A stretch of 64,000 bases of DNA from Haliotis cracherodii. Taxonomy: Eukaryota. The notes beneath the pieces were generated by a model. It ran no database searches, was not told the DNA's origin, and worked only from the letters and a program-made list of their open reading frames with translations. The DNA is taken from positions 60,140,001 through 60,204,000 of the forward strand of contig NW_027266264.1 in the NCBI RefSeq assembly GCF_022045235.1. Direction: 5' to 3'. A program made the position numbers and the translations under genes. Positions 39,315 to 45,300 of the stretch are shown in pieces (the stretch's first letter is position 1; each line of letters begins with the position of its first letter).

Positions 39315-42300
39315 CTGCACAAACAAAACATACATGTTATTCCTAGGGTCATGGGAATCTTCAAAACCAGTTTCATGAAAGTCCAGATCCGTCATGCATA
39401 TTGATCTGGATTTAAATATTTTTCAGCGCACAGGTGACAAGTATTCCAATGAGTTGCAACTGCATGTGGAGAGTTGTGCCCCTTAGGCATACAAGGATAG
39501 AATGATTGTGTGTTCGAGTCCTATTTGGGTTGATGATTGTTGGTTTGTCAGCACCATACCCATGTTTGTCGGTTTCACTAAAGACTTAAGTATCTAAGAC
39601 CTGCATCACTTTGGGCTTTCCACTCACATTAAGTTGGCATGCTGTGATATAACTAAAATACTGTTCAATTCAATTCTTTATTTCAGTATAAAGGCCATAG
39701 GCCCACGTACAAATACTCATTGAAAAATACAGTATGAGGCAGATGAAAGAGGGTATTAAGTGACAGTATTTCGGATTGCAAGTGCTTCCAGTATATACTT
39801 AACACAATTAGTTACAATACTAGTGCGGTTACAAGATAATAGAGTATTATATTTAAATAAGGTAGGATTGGAAGAGTAATAAATAGGTAAATACTTATTT
39901 CTTAAATATCTGTAACATGGGCAGACAAGCATAAAATGAAACTCATCTTCAATTTCCTGTAAATTACAATATCTGCACTGCCTATTACAGTACTCTATAC
40001 CGCATCTTCTACCTAAATTTACCATCAATGGCAACTCGCCAATTCTTAACAAACAAAACATACGCCTATAATGACGGCTTGTGATTTCACAGAGATACTT
40101 TTCAACTGTTAGCAATGACTTATATTCCTTATACATTGATAATTTACGTATTTCACAAACTTTACAATACCAGTCCTGTTGGTTACAGTCTTTTACCCTT
40201 TGAATAAATGCATTAATAAAGAGGGTCTCATTACCAACTTCCTGCGAAATCCACACGTGGCCAAATCCATAACTGAATAATAGTCTTTTGACACAAGTTA
40301 CCCATGTAGTGCGATTAACTTCATCTAAAGATTTCAGCATTAAATAACATTGCTTAGGGTATCTATAACTGGGTAAAGATAACAATTTCAACCAATATTT
40401 AATACATTTCTTGTGATAATCAATAAATAAGCCATATCTACCACATTCGCCAAGGGCAGCAACATTTGTAACATGACTTCCAATTCCAATAGTAAATTTA
40501 CAGAATTTAATCTGAAATTTTTCAATTGCTGCAATTTTTGAATAGCCCCATATTTCTGAAGTGTATAATAATATCGGCTTAATTTGAATGTCAAATATTT
40601 TAAAAAGTATATGTACGGGTATGTTCTTCAAACAATGCTGTAATTTCTTAACGACGAACAGAGCCTTATTTGCCTTCTGAACAAGAGAGTTGATACCAGT
40701 CGTCCAACACAGCCGATTTGAAAATAACAAACCTAGATAATTATAATAGGTAGATACATTAACATTAACATCTCCAAACCTCCATTTCTCAGTACTCCTA
40801 AGTTTGCCACCATTTCTGAAAACTAAAATTTCAGTCTTACTATGGTTAACTTCTAAACCCCATTTAGTACAGAATGATTTAAGGATATTAAGTTTTCGTT
40901 GGAGACCAACTACAGTATCATCAATTATGCACAAATCATCGGCATATAATAACAACAAAATGTCTAGAGATTCTTGACTCACAAATATTCCCCTCTCGCC
41001 GGAGGAGTGCAACATTGATTCTAATTCAACAATAAGCAAAGAGAACAATATAGGGCTAAGGGTGCAGCCTTGGCGTACACCACTTAGCGTTTCAAAGTAG
41101 CAAGTTGCTGTGCTATTTGATAACTTTACAGCCGATTTCACTTTTAAATACATATCTTTAATGACATAAAATAACTTTCCATGTATACCCTTATTTAACA
41201 TGACATACCACAACAATTTTCTATTTACACAATCAAAGGCTTTTCTAAAATCAACAAATAAACAGTAAAATCTGCCATTAGCTTTAGATAAGTATTTCTG
41301 TATTAGACTTTGCAACACAAATATATTATCAATGGTGCTGTATCCAGCCCTAAAACCTGCCTGAGACTCTGGTATCTTATCGTAAATGTCACAAAACATA
41401 GTAAGCCGTTTATTAAGAATAAAAGTAAATATTTTACCCAATACATCACTAAGTGTAATACCCCTATAATTGTTAACATCAAATTTGCTGCCTTTCTTAT
41501 GAAGGGGAGTAAGTAAACCTCGAGCCCAATCCTCAGGAAAATTACCACTATGCAAAATAGCGTTATATAATATAACTAGATAAGGAAGAAGATTACCCTT
41601 GCAACACTTTATCATTTCTGGTAGAACTCCATCGGGACCAGCCGCCTTACCATCTTTCAAATGATTAATAGCATGTAAAATTTCTGGTTCAGTGATTTCA
41701 CAATTCAAAATATCATTTAATTCTTCATCATTACAGACAAAACAGTTAGATTCCTCGTGTTCATAAACAAAACTCTCAGCGGAAGCAAGATTATCATGAT
41801 CAACATCATAATCAGTTATATTCAAAATATTTTTAAAGTAGGAGACCCATTCTGATGGAGCTATAAACTGAGTTGCATTACTGTTTTTTGACACAAGTCC
41901 CTTCACTTGGTTCCAGAAGATCTTAGGATTACAAGTATGAGACATTAAATCCTCAAGTAATCGCTCTTCAAAAATCAATTTCTTTTGTCTACACATATTT
42001 CGATACGCATTTCTTAACTGTCTAAACTGTTGTAAATAGTTCAGATCACCAGTTATTCTAAACATATTAAGAATACGATATTTCTCATGTTTCAACTCTT
42101 TACATTCGCTATCATGCCATCTTGCTCCTGAGAATGTACATATGTTTGAGCTTGTAATTACCTTCATATCACTGACAGAAGCACAAGTAATGATCAATGA
42201 TGTCAATTTTGTAACTGCACAATTAACACCGCTAGAAATTTCACCCATGAAATCATCAAAGCTATATGATGATAGCGAGTCCCGAAGTAACTCAGAAAAT

Positions 42301-45300
42301 GCTTCAGCCTTACCAGCACACCATCGGTATCTACAAATAGATTCTGCATTATCAGCATTCATGTTACTGATAACATTCTCTGTATCTGTAACAGCAAACT
42401 TAAACACAATGGGAAAATGATCTGACTCACATCTTGTGGCTACACTGAAATCATAATTAGTACTAAATAATTCAGATGAACATAAGCAATAATCAACCAT
42501 GCTGGCACCCCCACCAGCAAAGCATGTAAAATCCCCGCGGGGATCTGATTTTGTTCTCCCATTCATCATATGTATATCAAGAGAACAGCATAAATCTATT
42601 AAATCACAACCATGGGAGTTTACACGATCATCTGTCCACTTTCTAGATATGCTTAAACTGTCAATTTTATAATTCAAATCTTCCAGTGAAGGAATGTATT
42701 TGTTGCCATCCTGTAAAATATAATCCTTTAAGTTGCCTGTTCTAGCATTCATATCACCCATAATCACAAAAACAAAGTCTTCAATATCAGCATCTGTGAT
42801 GCACGAGAGCAAACAGTTTTCTAAGTAATCAATCCCTTTCTGCAGTCTTGGATCGCTCCGGACGGATGAATATACAGGGTGAATATACACACATCCATAT
42901 AAAATATCGTATGTGTAACCAAAAAGTTTCTTATCCAAAAGCACGAAAATACAATCAGTAAAGTCAGACCAGATCTTCTTGATGTATTGACTTGCAAAAT
43001 GGCTAACGCAAACGGCAACACCGCCTCTGTTATTAAAGTCCCGTTGGTTAATATAAACAGTATGGTTTATAAATATAGAAGAAATGTCATCTTTATTTAC
43101 ATTGTTCCATATTTCAACAAATCCAATGACATCAAACTTCAGACAATACTGTATAAAGTCAGAGTCAGCTAGTTTCTGTTTCAAACCATGAACATTCCAT
43201 GTCACTATTTCAAACCAAGTACGCGCATCAATCTCTGGCGGCAACTGGTGGACCGGGCCATCTTCCTAGCTTAGGCCGGGCGAGCTAATGACATCATCAG
43301 ACGCACTCACTTCACGTGAAAGTCCTGGCTTGTTACCTGATTTGACAGTTGTGACACAGTCTAAACCCAGGTCATAGGAATAAATATTATCCTCAGTATA
43401 CAGCTTATCATACCGCAAAAATGCCTTCAAACCTGATTCACGCGCCTGAAACATCTTCGGGAGAAGTTTCTTTCTCTTCTGTCGCACCAGTGGGGAGAAG
43501 TCCTCAGTAATAAACATATCAGTGTCCTTCAAAGCTTTAGATGCCCTCAGAATAGCGTGTTTGTCCTTGTCGTCTGCTAGCTTAACAATAATAGCCTTCC
43601 CCTTCATAATGCGATGTGCCCTTTGAATGTTCACATCATCTAATAACTGCAGGTCGTTCCTGAGGACATTTTTTACAATCAGTTCACAATCAGTCCATGA
43701 CTCTGTTTCATTACCTCTCGGTACACCGTGAAATATCAGATTGTTACGCCTGCTCATATTCTCAAGGTAATCAAGTTTGTCATCCATTGCTTTCATCTGA
43801 TCTTTCAAACGAAAATTTTCCTCTTCTAGGGCTTGACATCGGTTATTAGTCTCAGAAATCTGCTCTAAAACCACCTTCAGTGTACTCTCAACAGTCTGAA
43901 GTTTCAGATTCATATCATCATTAGAACGCTGAATTTTGTCTATCTTACATGACACTTCTCTCAGTTCATCCAACACAGTTTGTAAAGTTTTTTCACTTGC
44001 CTTTGAGGATAATGTAAGTTGCTTCTCTCCACCTTTACCTCCAGCAGTAGATCTAGTTTGTACGCCATCATTAGAATCCGGACCTGGGTTGGGTTCGACA
44101 CCTCCCATCAGTAACAGCATGAGAATGAGGTTCAGCACAACCAAGCGGGTGTGTATACCAACCAGCGCGTTTAAACGAGGGATGCGTCCACGTCTGGCCT
44201 TATTTGCTTTTCAAATACTGTTCAAAGCAGTATTGAACTCACTCATTTTCCAGAATATAGAGGTGATTAGGAATCTCTAGAGATAGATAATCTTTAATGA
44301 TAAATAGTGAAGTTGAGGATAATGTTTTCACTGTGTATCAAACTCCTGTTTTGAAACATGTTTCAGTAATATTTCAGGTTGACACATGTGAGCTTTAAAG
44401 CCACTCTCCATGTAGGACTTGTATGTATATTCTCTTACCACATTGCCTGGTGATGATGACTGTATCTGCCATGACAACGACCTCTTGATCTGACCTTCTG
44501 GGATGACAATTGGGAGTGATGTCCCCTGACCTGTTATGTCCCCACCAGATGGCACCGACGAGGCCAGGATGTGAGAGGGTGTCTTATGTTCCTGTGTAAG
44601 AAACAAAACAATGACAGTGACAGAGAGGGACAGCTTCCTGATGGATCATCCAGTGAGGAGGTCAGGCTGCACCATTGCTTATTCATTACAGTAAACTACG
44701 GTTGTAATGAACTCTAAGGGACCACAAAATTTAGTAATTATAACAGTTGTTCTTTAGAAGCATATATACAGCAAAACCAGTTCGTCATATCATCCAGGTC
44801 GTTCTAAGCGTGTTCGTTATAAATGTAGTTCACTGTATTTTGTTGAAAATTGGCTGTTTATTAAGTTCTTACTTTTTAAATTTAGGCTTTTTAACGCTGC
44901 ATTCAGTGCAACAATGTAAAACAATGCACTAAAGTTATTTCTGACTATATTGGTCCTATAATCAGGGGGTACGGATGGTCCAGTCATCTAATCGCTGTCC
45001 CTAGGGCACAAAAGAAACCTATGATTGTGGGTTCGAATACTGGTTCGCCCCGATTATTTTTTAGGTTTGTCAGCACCCGGGGTCGGAGGTTTCACCAATG
45101 TGGTAAACATCTGTGACATGCATCACTTGGGGCGATATGAAGCACAAATGAGAAAGACTTTGTTTCCCTGAAGAGTATGAGGGTCTTACCTTTCTCTGAT
45201 AATCATGGTCAAATATCCCAACATTGGCGACAGGTATGACATTGGTGGAAGAGTCCATGTTGCTGAGAGGAGGGGGTGAGGATGTATGCATCTCGGCAAA

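What the first reader, a model, noticed from the sequence alone, without database searches (positions are those of the whole stretch)
43200..43300. LINE ORF1 and ORF2 are one reading frame separated by a single UAG, and ORF2 has no usable AUG: candidate gag-pol-style readthrough
Seen: the minus strand reads ...GGC CTA AGC TAG GAA GAT GGC CCG GTC CAC CAG TTG CCG..., so ORF2 continues in frame straight after the ORF1 stop (43266-43268). The first in-frame Met of ORF2 is about 160 codons in (MGDMNAR), past the N-terminal endonuclease residues (TWNVHG...E). The nearby AUG (GAAGAUGG) is out of frame and opens only a short ORF. ORF2 is otherwise intact, so this does not look like decay. The stop also sits between CCCGGCC and GGCCCGG, which could pair as a stem. 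Inference: ORF2 is made by UAG readthrough as an ORF1-ORF2 fusion, or by AUG-independent reinitiation. With the 2A-like motif, the element would stack two recoding events on one mRNA.
Basis: partly seen in the sequence, partly recalled or inferred. Interest (0 to 1): 0.8.

Follow-up and report, generated by a model that had tools for sequence, protein, structure and literature searches.

The report
Conserved in-frame UAG between LINE ORFs
A full-length LINE retrotransposon has its two genes in one reading frame split by a single UAG, and this stop, plus a 19-base signal starting at it, is conserved across many very distant LINE families, which points to programmed stop-codon readthrough (gag-pol style) as the way the reverse transcriptase is made.

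Summary
On the minus strand, ORF1 (44120-43269) ends in UAG (43268-43266). The EN/RT frame continues in phase for 1169 codons. Its first in-frame AUG is codon 169, past catalytic endonuclease residues.

The stop is not a copy-specific mutation. Eleven of 12 genomic copies keep a stop. All 13 related LINE families sampled in this genome (endonuclease 31-56% identical) have ORF1 in phase, one TAG, and the block UAG-GRR-NNY-GGCC-NN-GNCC. Synonymous positions are frozen there and flanks are unconserved. True ORF2 stops are TAA in 8 of 9 families.

LINEs on metagenome contigs show the same layout. Their contexts include UAG-G, UAG-CAA-UCA and UGA-CGG, the three classical readthrough contexts.

Instead, the block resembles and is complementary to a conserved 3'UTR hairpin (GGCC-NNN-GGCC). 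It is the best pairing partner of the 3'UTR in most families, but there is no covariation.

Best reading: programmed UAG readthrough giving an ORF1p-ORF2p fusion (about 0.57). Main rival: AUG-independent reinitiation at the block. No translation data exist. I found no paper describing LINE readthrough. A sister note (s1-829683) saw the same on other DNA of this genome.

The parts
39665..44212 (-). Full-length LINE copy, about 4.55 kb
   Evidence: Four other copies lose similarity exactly at 44212. Flanked by a target-site duplication TTGAACAGTATTT. Contig joints at 44213.
44213..44226 (-). 5' copy of the target-site duplication (TTTGAACAGTATTT), in the host repeat
   Evidence: Read directly. 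Matches 39668-39655.
39655..39668 (-). 3' copy of the target-site duplication; overlaps the last bases of the LINE tail by microhomology
43269..44120 (-). ORF1 (284 codons from the first AUG): coiled coil plus RRM-like plus C-terminal domain, L1 ORF1p type
   Evidence: Translation. AlphaFold model pLDDT 78. Foldseek top hits are the human L1 ORF1p trimer 2yko, E 1.4e-9.
44079..44105 (-). 2A-like motif GGVEPNPGP, 9 residues after the first AUG
   Evidence: The motif is conserved in the ORF1 frame of sister families, several with canonical GD[IV]ExNPGP.
43266..43268 (-). In-frame UAG between ORF1 and ORF2
43250..43268 (-). Conserved 19-nt cassette, +1 to +19: UAG GAA GAU GGC CCG GUC C. Family pattern: UAG-GRR-NNY-GGCC-NN-GNCC.
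   Evidence: Information profile over 18 families: only +1 to +19 is conserved, flanks about 0.1 bit. The Gly codon is GGC in 8/9, whereas ten other invariant Gly columns use 3-4 codons (P = 1.3e-5).
43205..43261 (-). Out-of-frame (+1) AUG in good Kozak context, opening an 18-codon ORF
   Evidence: Not conserved as AUG in other families.
43200..43249 (-). Linker between the cassette and the endonuclease start (W23). Translated in frame 0. Length and sequence vary between families (10-45 codons).
   Evidence: Alignment A1. Family A versus L067: 13/25 residues identical with 6 synonymous-only codons in frame 0; the other frames carry stops.
39756..43265 (-). ORF2 frame, 1169 codons plus UAA. Endonuclease about 43205-42417; reverse transcriptase about 41498-40731.
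   Evidence: RT matches human L1 ORF2p structures at E 4e-31.
42759..42761 (-). First in-frame AUG of the ORF2 frame (codon 169)
39693..39704 (-). 3'UTR hairpin GGGCC-UAU-GGCC. Conserved in all 9 families checked. Similar and complementary to the junction cassette.
   Evidence: The 14-mer has 596 genome hits versus 2 in the control.
39665..39682 (-). AAUAAA (39682-39677) and the short 5-mer repeat tail (GAATTGAATTGAA)

Best explanation
The element is an intact, recently active APE-type LINE. Its whole coding capacity is one reading frame: (2A-like peptide)-ORF1p-UAG-ORF2p.

Most ribosomes would terminate at the UAG and make ORF1p, an L1-type trimeric RNA-binding protein. A small fraction would decode the UAG with a near-cognate tRNA and continue. 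The product would be an ORF1p-linker-ORF2p fusion of about 1454 residues carrying endonuclease and reverse transcriptase. This is the way gammaretroviruses make Gag-Pol.

The signal is the 19-nt block UAG-GRR-NNY-GGCC-NN-GNCC, a Beier-Grimm type III-like context. It may be helped by pairing of its GGCC...GNCC part with the conserved GGCC-NNN-GGCC hairpin of the 3'UTR. That would resemble the long-range interactions needed for readthrough in tombusviruses.

Shown:
- The anatomy.
- Conservation of stop, phase and block.
- Nucleotide-level constraint on the block.
- Frame-0 coding right after the stop.

Inferred:
- That readthrough occurs.
- That a fusion protein is the active form.
- That the 3'UTR takes part.
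For: 1. The stop and phase are kept in 11/12 copies and in 13/13 diverged families of the genome, always as TAG. TAGGGGTGTGGCC occurs 129 times versus 4 in the control. Sense-codon versions are at background apart from satellite arrays.
2. Stop identity is selected. The junction is TAG in 9/9 families, while the real ORF2 stop is TAA in 8/9 (Fisher P = 2e-4).
3. The constraint is at nucleotide level. Only +1 to +19 is conserved. First and third codon positions are fixed while second positions vary.
4. There is no in-frame AUG or near-cognate codon in codons 1-6, yet frame-0 coding constraint starts by codon 7. An AUG-started product would lack N24, E51 and Y127.
5. An unbiased endonuclease-protein search of metagenome contigs finds 14 distinct LINEs with a long ORF1 (120 aa or more) in phase and a single stop, of about 26 with such an ORF1 near the ORF2 start (P = 0.025 against 1/3). 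With L070 (shorter upstream frame) and L091 and L135 that makes 17. Stops: TAG in 13, TGA-CGG in 2, TAA in 2. Contexts include UAG-G, UAG-CAA-UCA and UGA-CGG, the three classical readthrough classes (PMC3159437; PMC13517186).
6. The variable, low-complexity linker fits a tether in a fusion protein.
7. The junction block is the best, or in the top 0.05-0.35%, of all 16-nt windows for pairing with the element's own 3'UTR in 9/10 families.
Against: - There is no direct evidence of translation through the stop.
- No local stimulatory structure was found.
- Type III contexts are thought to need a stimulatory structure. The only candidate, 3'UTR pairing, shows no family-specific covariation (permutation P = 0.14). 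It cannot be told apart from one motif being bound twice by a protein.
- Human and rat L1 make ORF2p without an AUG and without a fusion protein (PMC5972666; PMC2241872), so a LINE precedent exists for the rival mechanism.
- Families share ancestry, so the counts are not fully independent.
- Whether the runs that hold the element are RNA is only a guess.
Confidence: 0.57

Rival explanations
1. AUG-independent termination-reinitiation, the 'unconventional' L1-type mechanism. Ribosomes terminate at the UAG, the 40S or 80S is held by the conserved block (alone or paired with the 3'UTR), and translation resumes at the next codons without Met-tRNAi. ORF2p is then a separate protein.
For: - Human L1 ORF2 translation does not need its AUG and depends on ORF1 translation (reviewed in PMC5972666; PMC5009743).
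- No ORF1p-ORF2p fusion is seen in rat cells (PMC2241872).
- SART1 coupling needs a structure downstream of the stop.
- A conserved block directly after the stop, with no AUG, fits a tethering site.
Against: - Reinitiation gives no reason for UAG to be kept against UAA or UGA over divergence to 30% protein identity, while ORF2 itself ends in UAA.
- Codons 1-6 are never near-cognate starts.
- There is no IRES-like structure.
- Other LINE lineages carry UGA-CGG and UAG-CAA-UCA, which are readthrough contexts rather than reinitiation contexts.
Confidence: 0.25
2. ORF2p is made from another RNA or by internal entry (a spliced or subgenomic transcript, or an IRES) using a non-AUG start. The in-frame stop is then a true terminator and the phase is incidental.
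For: - Mouse L1 has been proposed to use internal entry (own knowledge).
- Contig data cannot exclude other transcripts.
Against: - No splice-type joint around the junction appears in the contigs of 4 runs.
- The fold is no more stable than shuffles.
- Phase and single-stop layout are conserved across families and other organisms, which internal entry does not require.
Confidence: 0.08
3. A-to-I editing turns UAG into UIG (Trp), as at the amber/W site of hepatitis delta virus, in a fraction of transcripts.
For: UAG is the preferred ADAR triplet (own knowledge).
Against: - The stem is not conserved and not above chance.
- Contigs bridging the stop in two runs list no change at 43266-43268. This is weak evidence, because contigs drop minor variants.
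- Editing does not explain the UGA-CGG and UAG-CAA-UCA junctions in other lineages.
Confidence: 0.04
4. Copy-specific nonsense mutation in a decaying element; the family's functional form has a sense codon or an ORF2 AUG.
For: One copy (L006) lacks the stop through a 12-nt deletion.
Against: - 11/12 copies and 13/13 families have the stop.
- Copies 98-99% identical have intact ORF1 and ORF2 frames with the stop.
- Sense-codon variants of the motif are at background level.
Confidence: 0.01

Closest known systems
Gammaretrovirus gag-UAG-pol readthrough (Beier-Grimm type III, UAG-G plus downstream element)
   Same: A structural or RNA-binding protein and the polymerase lie in one frame, split by a single UAG followed by G/purines. 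The expected product ratio is set by leaky termination. A conserved element starts 6-8 nt after the stop.
   Different: No compact pseudoknot was found. The element is a non-LTR retrotransposon without a protease, so the fusion would stay uncleaved. The conserved block is a short GGCC-NN-GNCC primary-sequence motif.
Tombusvirus and luteovirus readthrough with long-range pairing to the 3' end (PMC3234231 listed; summarised)
   Same: A UAG-G context, and a sequence just 3' of the stop that is complementary to a conserved 3'UTR element kilobases away.
   Different: The pairing here is only predicted. No covariation was found, and because GGCC is self-complementary, similarity and complementarity cannot be separated.
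Human, rat and mouse L1 bicistronic translation (unconventional termination-reinitiation)
   Same: Same element class. ORF1p has the same fold. ORF2 is expressed at low level without dependence on an AUG.
   Different: L1 has a 60-63 nt spacer with two in-frame stops and an ORF2 AUG. Here there is one UAG, no spacer, no AUG and a conserved post-stop block.
SART1 UAAUG stop-start coupling
   Same: A LINE with no inter-ORF spacer and a downstream RNA requirement.
   Different: SART1 overlaps an AUG with the stop and changes frame. Here there is no AUG, and the nearby AUG is out of frame and not conserved.
2A-containing APE-type non-LTR elements (Odon et al. 2013, PMC3708506; Luke et al. 2013, PMC3894237)
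   Same: A 2A-like NPGP motif near the N-terminus of the long frame in marine invertebrate LINEs, including molluscs.
   Different: Those papers describe the 2A as lying in 'ORF2' of elements mostly lacking ORF1, and do not mention an in-frame stop or readthrough. Here the 2A precedes a bona fide L1-type ORF1p, which is separated from ORF2 by UAG.
Arabidopsis Ta11 LINE
   Same: From memory only: ORF1 and ORF2 were reported in frame, separated by a single stop, with suppression suggested.
   Different: I could not verify this, because the paper is not in the library. It is a plant L1-clade element. As far as I recall, no conserved post-stop block or cross-family survey was reported.

Membership tests
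APE-type LINE (non-LTR retrotransposon) | ORF2 with an N-terminal AP-endonuclease domain and a reverse transcriptase domain | tested here: met
   Pfam Exo_endo_phos at 21-283 and RVT_1 at 590-845. RT matches L1 ORF2p structures at E 4e-31.
APE-type LINE (non-LTR retrotransposon) | ORF1 encoding an RNA-binding, gag-like protein | tested here: met
   The model matches the human L1 ORF1p trimer (coiled coil, RRM, CTD), E 1.4e-9.
APE-type LINE (non-LTR retrotransposon) | Target-site duplication, defined 5' end, 3' tail, multiple dispersed copies | tested here: met
   TSD of 13-14 bp. A common 5' end at 44212 in 5 copies. AATAAA plus a 5-mer repeat tail. At least 12 copies.
Programmed stop-codon readthrough (type III, UAG-G) | Single in-frame stop, with the downstream frame under coding constraint and needed for function | tested here: met
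Programmed stop-codon readthrough (type III, UAG-G) | Stop identity and 3' context conserved beyond amino-acid needs (UAG-G, hexanucleotide UAGGGV or UAGGAU-like) | tested here: met
   17/18 families UAG; +4 is G in 15/18; +5 and +6 are purines; synonymous sites are frozen to +19. Definitions from PMC13517186.
Programmed stop-codon readthrough (type III, UAG-G) | Downstream stimulatory RNA structure (pseudoknot, stem-loop or long-range pairing) | tested here: inconclusive
   No local structure or conserved partner. There is strong predicted pairing with the 3'UTR hairpin but no covariation.
Programmed stop-codon readthrough (type III, UAG-G) | Readthrough product demonstrated | not testable with these tools
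   No proteomic or ribosome-profiling tool is available. The runs are contigs of uncertain type.
L1-type termination-reinitiation | Inter-ORF spacer with stop(s) of any identity; ORF2 start codon dispensable; separate ORF2p | tested here: inconclusive
   The missing AUG fits. UAG-specific conservation and the absence of a spacer do not. Whether ORF2p is a separate protein is not testable here.
SART1-type stop-start overlap (UAAUG) | An AUG overlapping or adjacent to the ORF1 stop, in the ORF2 frame | tested here: not met
   No AUG in the ORF2 frame before codon 169. The AUG at 43261 is in the +1 frame.
2A/StopGo recoding element | D[VI]ExNPGP motif with at least about 18 upstream residues in the exit tunnel | tested here: inconclusive
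   The motif here is GGVEPNPGP (D replaced by G), only 9 residues after the first AUG. Sister families have canonical GDIELNPGP with 120-180 upstream residues. Activity was not tested.

The most novel reading that the evidence does not exclude
A whole superfamily of marine-invertebrate LINEs makes its reverse transcriptase by programmed UAG readthrough as an ORF1p-ORF2p fusion. The readthrough would be driven by a 19-nt cassette that pairs with, or mimics, the 3'UTR hairpin that the reverse transcriptase recognises. Synthesis of the enzyme would then be physically coupled to the 3' end of its own RNA, giving a mechanism for cis-preference and feedback that parallels tombusvirus RNA switches. 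Together with an upstream 2A, the element would be a three-product polyprotein on one frame.
Probability: 0.22. Interest if true: 0.85.

Novelty: new variant of a known kind. Interest (0 to 1): 0.72.

Why it matters
How LINEs translate ORF2 from a bicistronic RNA has been an open question since the 1990s. In mammals it is called 'unconventional' and is still unexplained.

Here a large and diverse set of LINE families offers a simple, conserved and short signal: one UAG plus 16 bases. It can be tested in a reporter.

If it is readthrough, several things follow:
- Non-LTR elements would join retroviruses and RNA viruses in using leaky termination to set the gag:pol ratio.
- An uncleaved ORF1p-ORF2p fusion would give a direct physical basis for cis-preference.
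- TE annotation pipelines that treat the stop as damage, or call such elements 'single ORF' or 'ORF2 without start', would need revision.
- The GGCC-NN-GNCC block would be a new readthrough-context motif for animals.

Tried and rejected
- Copy-specific nonsense mutation: rejected.
- Any conserved local partner of the block within -120 to +185: mean z about 0.
- Complementarity of the block to the organism's own 18S rRNA: none. A first script timed out.
- Family-specific co-evolution of the junction and the 3'UTR: not significant (P = 0.14).
- Out-of-frame AUG or near-cognate start in the block opening a conserved ORF: the +1 and +2 frames are short and unconserved.
- N-myristoylation-type reading of the GCGQG peptide: dropped, because Gly at position 1 is not conserved.
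- A-to-I editing: no support.
The viral-contig scan found nothing.
- Literature: ten searches found no paper describing readthrough at a LINE ORF1/ORF2 junction. Zorro3 needs its ORF2 AUG. The Ta11 paper could not be fetched.
- LINE clade assignment was not achieved. Pfam sees only EN and RT, and ORF1 gives only coiled-coil noise.
- The large protein search (search of protein representatives) was not used.
Full report
**Observation**

On the minus strand the sequence reads ...TCG CCC GGC CTA AGC TAG GAA GAT GGC CCG GTC CAC CAG TTG..., with TAG at 43268-43266. ORF1 and the long EN/RT frame are in the same phase, and a single stop lies between them.

- The ORF2 frame (43265-39759) is 1169 codons without a stop. 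It carries Exo_endo_phos (aa 21-283) and RVT_1 (aa 590-845).
- Its first in-frame AUG is codon 169 (42761-42759). That is downstream of W23, N24, E51 and Y127, which are invariant in the endonuclease alignment of ten families. An AUG-initiated product would therefore lack catalytic endonuclease residues.
- The AUG in GAAGAUGG (43261-43259) is in the +1 frame and opens 18 codons.

**The element**

- Five copies share the same 5' end at 44212.
- A 13-14 bp target-site duplication (TTGAACAGTATTT) flanks 44212 to about 39665.
- The copy is therefore full length (about 4.55 kb) and sits inside a very abundant short repeat. Contig depth in the flanks is in the thousands, and there is a joint at 44213.
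- ORF1 starts at 44120 with [14 protein letters not shown].
- Its model is a long helix, then an RRM-like domain, then a C-terminal domain (pLDDT 78). The model matches the human L1 ORF1p trimer (2yko, E 1.4e-9).
- The 3'UTR has a GGGCC-UAU-GGCC hairpin (39704-39693), AAUAAA (39682-39677) and a 5-mer repeat tail.

**Not a private mutation**

The genome holds at least 12 copies of this family spanning the junction, at 93-100% identity.
- Ten have TAG and one has TAA.
- One has a 12-nt in-frame deletion that removes the stop.
- At least two copies have uninterrupted 1169-codon ORF2 frames.

**Deep conservation in the genome**

A search with the endonuclease region found many related families, at 31-56% amino-acid identity. 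I examined 50 loci.
- In all 13 families whose junction is present, ORF1 homology or a long upstream frame is in phase 0, the separating codon is TAG, and the same short block follows.
- Most families read TAG GGG TGT GGC CAG GGC C. This family reads TAG GAA GAT GGC CCG GTC C.
- After the block comes a linker of 10-45 codons that cannot be aligned between distant families, and then the endonuclease start (F/S/T)WN.
- Across 18 families, including six from other organisms, only positions +1 to +19 carry information. The pattern is UAG, G at +4, purines at +5 and +6, GGCC at +10 to +13, G at +16, and CC at +18 and +19. Flanks are at about 0.1 bit, and A is favoured at -1 and -3.

The constraint is on nucleotides.
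- First and third codon positions are fixed while second positions vary.
- The Gly codon at +10 to +12 is GGC in 8 of 9 families, although GGC is only 19% of Gly codons.
- Ten other invariant Gly columns of the same proteins use three or four different codons (P = 1.3e-5).

Genome counts agree. The 13-mer TAGGGGTGTGGCC occurs 129 times (control 4). Versions with AAG, CAG or GAG are at background once satellite arrays are set aside.

**Stop identity**

In nine families where both ends could be read, the junction stop is TAG in 9/9. The genuine ORF2 terminator is TAA in 8/9 (Fisher P = 2e-4). A terminator whose only job is to end ORF1 should drift between TAG and TAA over this much divergence. 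It does not.

**Coding right after the stop**

Family A and a 54%-identical relative (L067) share 13 of the first 25 residues after the stop. Six of these codons differ only synonymously (Leu, Pro, Arg, Thr, Phe, Asn). The other two frames contain stops.

Translation in frame 0 must therefore begin within the first six codons. None of those codons is AUG or a near-cognate start in any family.

**Other organisms**

I therefore used an unbiased endonuclease-profile scan of metagenome contigs, which returned 74 loci.
- Among loci with a recognisable ORF1 (120 aa or more) next to the ORF2 start, 14 distinct elements have ORF1 in phase with a single stop. About 12 have other arrangements: overlap, another phase, or several stops (P = 0.025 against 1/3).
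- With L070 (shorter upstream frame) and two loci resolved later (L091 and L135), there are 17 in-phase single-stop loci. The stop is TAG in 13, TGA in 2 and TAA in 2.
- Contexts are UAG-G (most), UAG-CAA-UCA (L105/L106, with decayed copies L132/L133), UGA-CGG (the L116 group and L130), UAA-CAA-UGU-GGCC (L072) and UAA-AUG (L123).
- UAG-CAA-UYA, UGA-CGG and UAG-G are the type I, II and III readthrough contexts of Beier and Grimm (PMC3159437; PMC13517186).
- AT-rich contigs with ordinary UAA...AUG starts and no in-phase ORF1 serve as contrast.

**RNA structure**

- The upstream arm is missing in sister families.
- The best duplex of the block with 120 nt upstream or 160 nt downstream is no better than with shuffled flanks, with mean z about 0.
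- The 141-nt fold has z = 0.09.
- There is no complement in the organism's 18S rRNA.

Something else turned up.
- All nine 3'UTRs carry (G)GGCC-NNN-GGCC, placed 0-10 nt before AAUAAA and preceded by UGUAY. The 14-mer has 596 genome hits against 2 in the control.
- The junction block GGCC-NN-GNCC is both similar and complementary to it.
- In 9 of 10 families the junction window is the best, or within the top 0.05-0.35%, of about 2000 windows across 4 kb for pairing with the element's own 3'UTR (-17 to -25 kcal/mol against a median of -7). The one family with a degenerate block (L056) shows no such pairing.
- Own-versus-foreign 3'UTR pairings do not differ (permutation P = 0.14). There is thus no covariation.
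- Pairing, as in tombusvirus readthrough, cannot be separated from one motif being recognised twice by a protein.
- In L099, which lacks the GGCC block, AGCCUAAG at +11 to +18 is the exact complement of CUUAGGCU 13 nt after its ORF2 stop. Its overall rank is unremarkable (3.5%).

**2A**

The NPGP motif is present in the ORF1 frame of most families. Several have the canonical GD[IV]ExNPGP. In many families it is preceded by a conserved protein of about 130 residues beginning MG[IV]P..WRARIG. The general layout is therefore N-protein-2A-ORF1p-UAG-ORF2p.

In the window's family the N-protein is gone, the Asp is replaced by Gly, and only 9 residues precede the motif. Its activity here is doubtful.

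**Reads**

Contigs of four runs (RNA only by guess) from four organism labels cover the element at 90-99% identity. Two contigs bridge the stop without a listed change or joint. This shows presence in close relatives. It shows nothing about translation.

**Literature**

The 2A papers on these elements do not mention an in-frame stop or readthrough, and they regard ORF2 initiation as open (PMC3708506; PMC3894237). Reviews list SART1 coupling and L1 reinitiation only. Ten full-text searches gave no report of LINE readthrough. From memory, Arabidopsis Ta11 was described with in-frame ORFs split by one stop, but I could not check it.

**Verdict**

It is a superfamily-wide, nucleotide-level conserved UAG cassette at the ORF1/ORF2 boundary.

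Programmed readthrough giving an ORF1p-ORF2p fusion is the best-supported mechanism (about 0.57). AUG-independent reinitiation at the cassette is the main rival (about 0.25). The local stem is rejected. A link to the 3'UTR hairpin is a new, untested lead.

An independent first-reader note on other DNA of this genome (s1-829683) reported the same pattern.

Copies were only compared.

Noticed in passing
window 39693-39704 (minus strand); L143-L150: All nine LINE families checked have a 3'UTR hairpin (G)GGCC-NNN-GGCC 0-10 nt before AAUAAA, preceded by UGUAY and followed by a 5-mer repeat tail. It is probably the reverse-transcriptase recognition element. The 14-mer has 596 genome hits versus 2 in the control.
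   Followed up: partly
window 39600-39664 and 44213-44900: The LINE is inserted, with a TSD of TTGAACAGTATTT, into a very abundant short repeat. Contig depth there is in the thousands, and contigs join 39621 to 44213 with 27-39 other letters between.
   Followed up: partly
L047, L049, L052, L055, L062, L042 (alignment A2): In sister families a conserved protein of about 130 residues, starting MG[IV]P..WRARIG.F..P.G and followed by a hydrophobic stretch, precedes the 2A motif in the ORF1 frame. It has no Pfam match and is absent from the window's family.
   Followed up: no
window 44121-44212: The ORF1 frame is open from the very 5' end of the element, but the first AUG leaves only 9 residues before the 2A-like motif. 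Either the motif is vestigial here or translation starts upstream at a non-AUG codon.
   Followed up: no
L006 (G000:C80:10094292-10097630): One copy has a 12-nt in-frame deletion that removes the stop and half of the cassette. This fuses ORF1 and ORF2 (AGC TAC GTC).
   Followed up: no
L105/L106, L116/L122/L124, L130 (metagenome contigs): LINEs of other organisms have ORF1 and ORF2 in phase, split by UAG-CAA-UCA or UGA-CGG. These are the plant-virus type I and alphavirus type II readthrough contexts.
   Followed up: partly
L099 (FXBE01001562.1): This LINE lacks the GGCC cassette, but AGCCUAAG at +11 to +18 after its UAG is the exact complement of CUUAGGCU 13 nt after its ORF2 stop. Its 3'UTR also has a GGAC-UUU-GUCC hairpin just before AAUAAA.
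   Followed up: partly
G000:C45:16686517-16687723, C45:66901258-66902101, C78:49607755-49608095: Satellite arrays whose unit contains CAGGGGTGTGGCC or GAGGGGTGTGGCC, the LINE post-stop block with a sense codon. They may derive from the LINE junction, or the match may be coincidental.
   Followed up: no
P0001, P0002: The closest database homologues (40% identical) start with Met and carry a Thr/Asp/Asn-rich low-complexity stretch of about 130 residues before the endonuclease. This looks like a much longer version of the variable linker. Their DNA could not be fetched.
   Followed up: no
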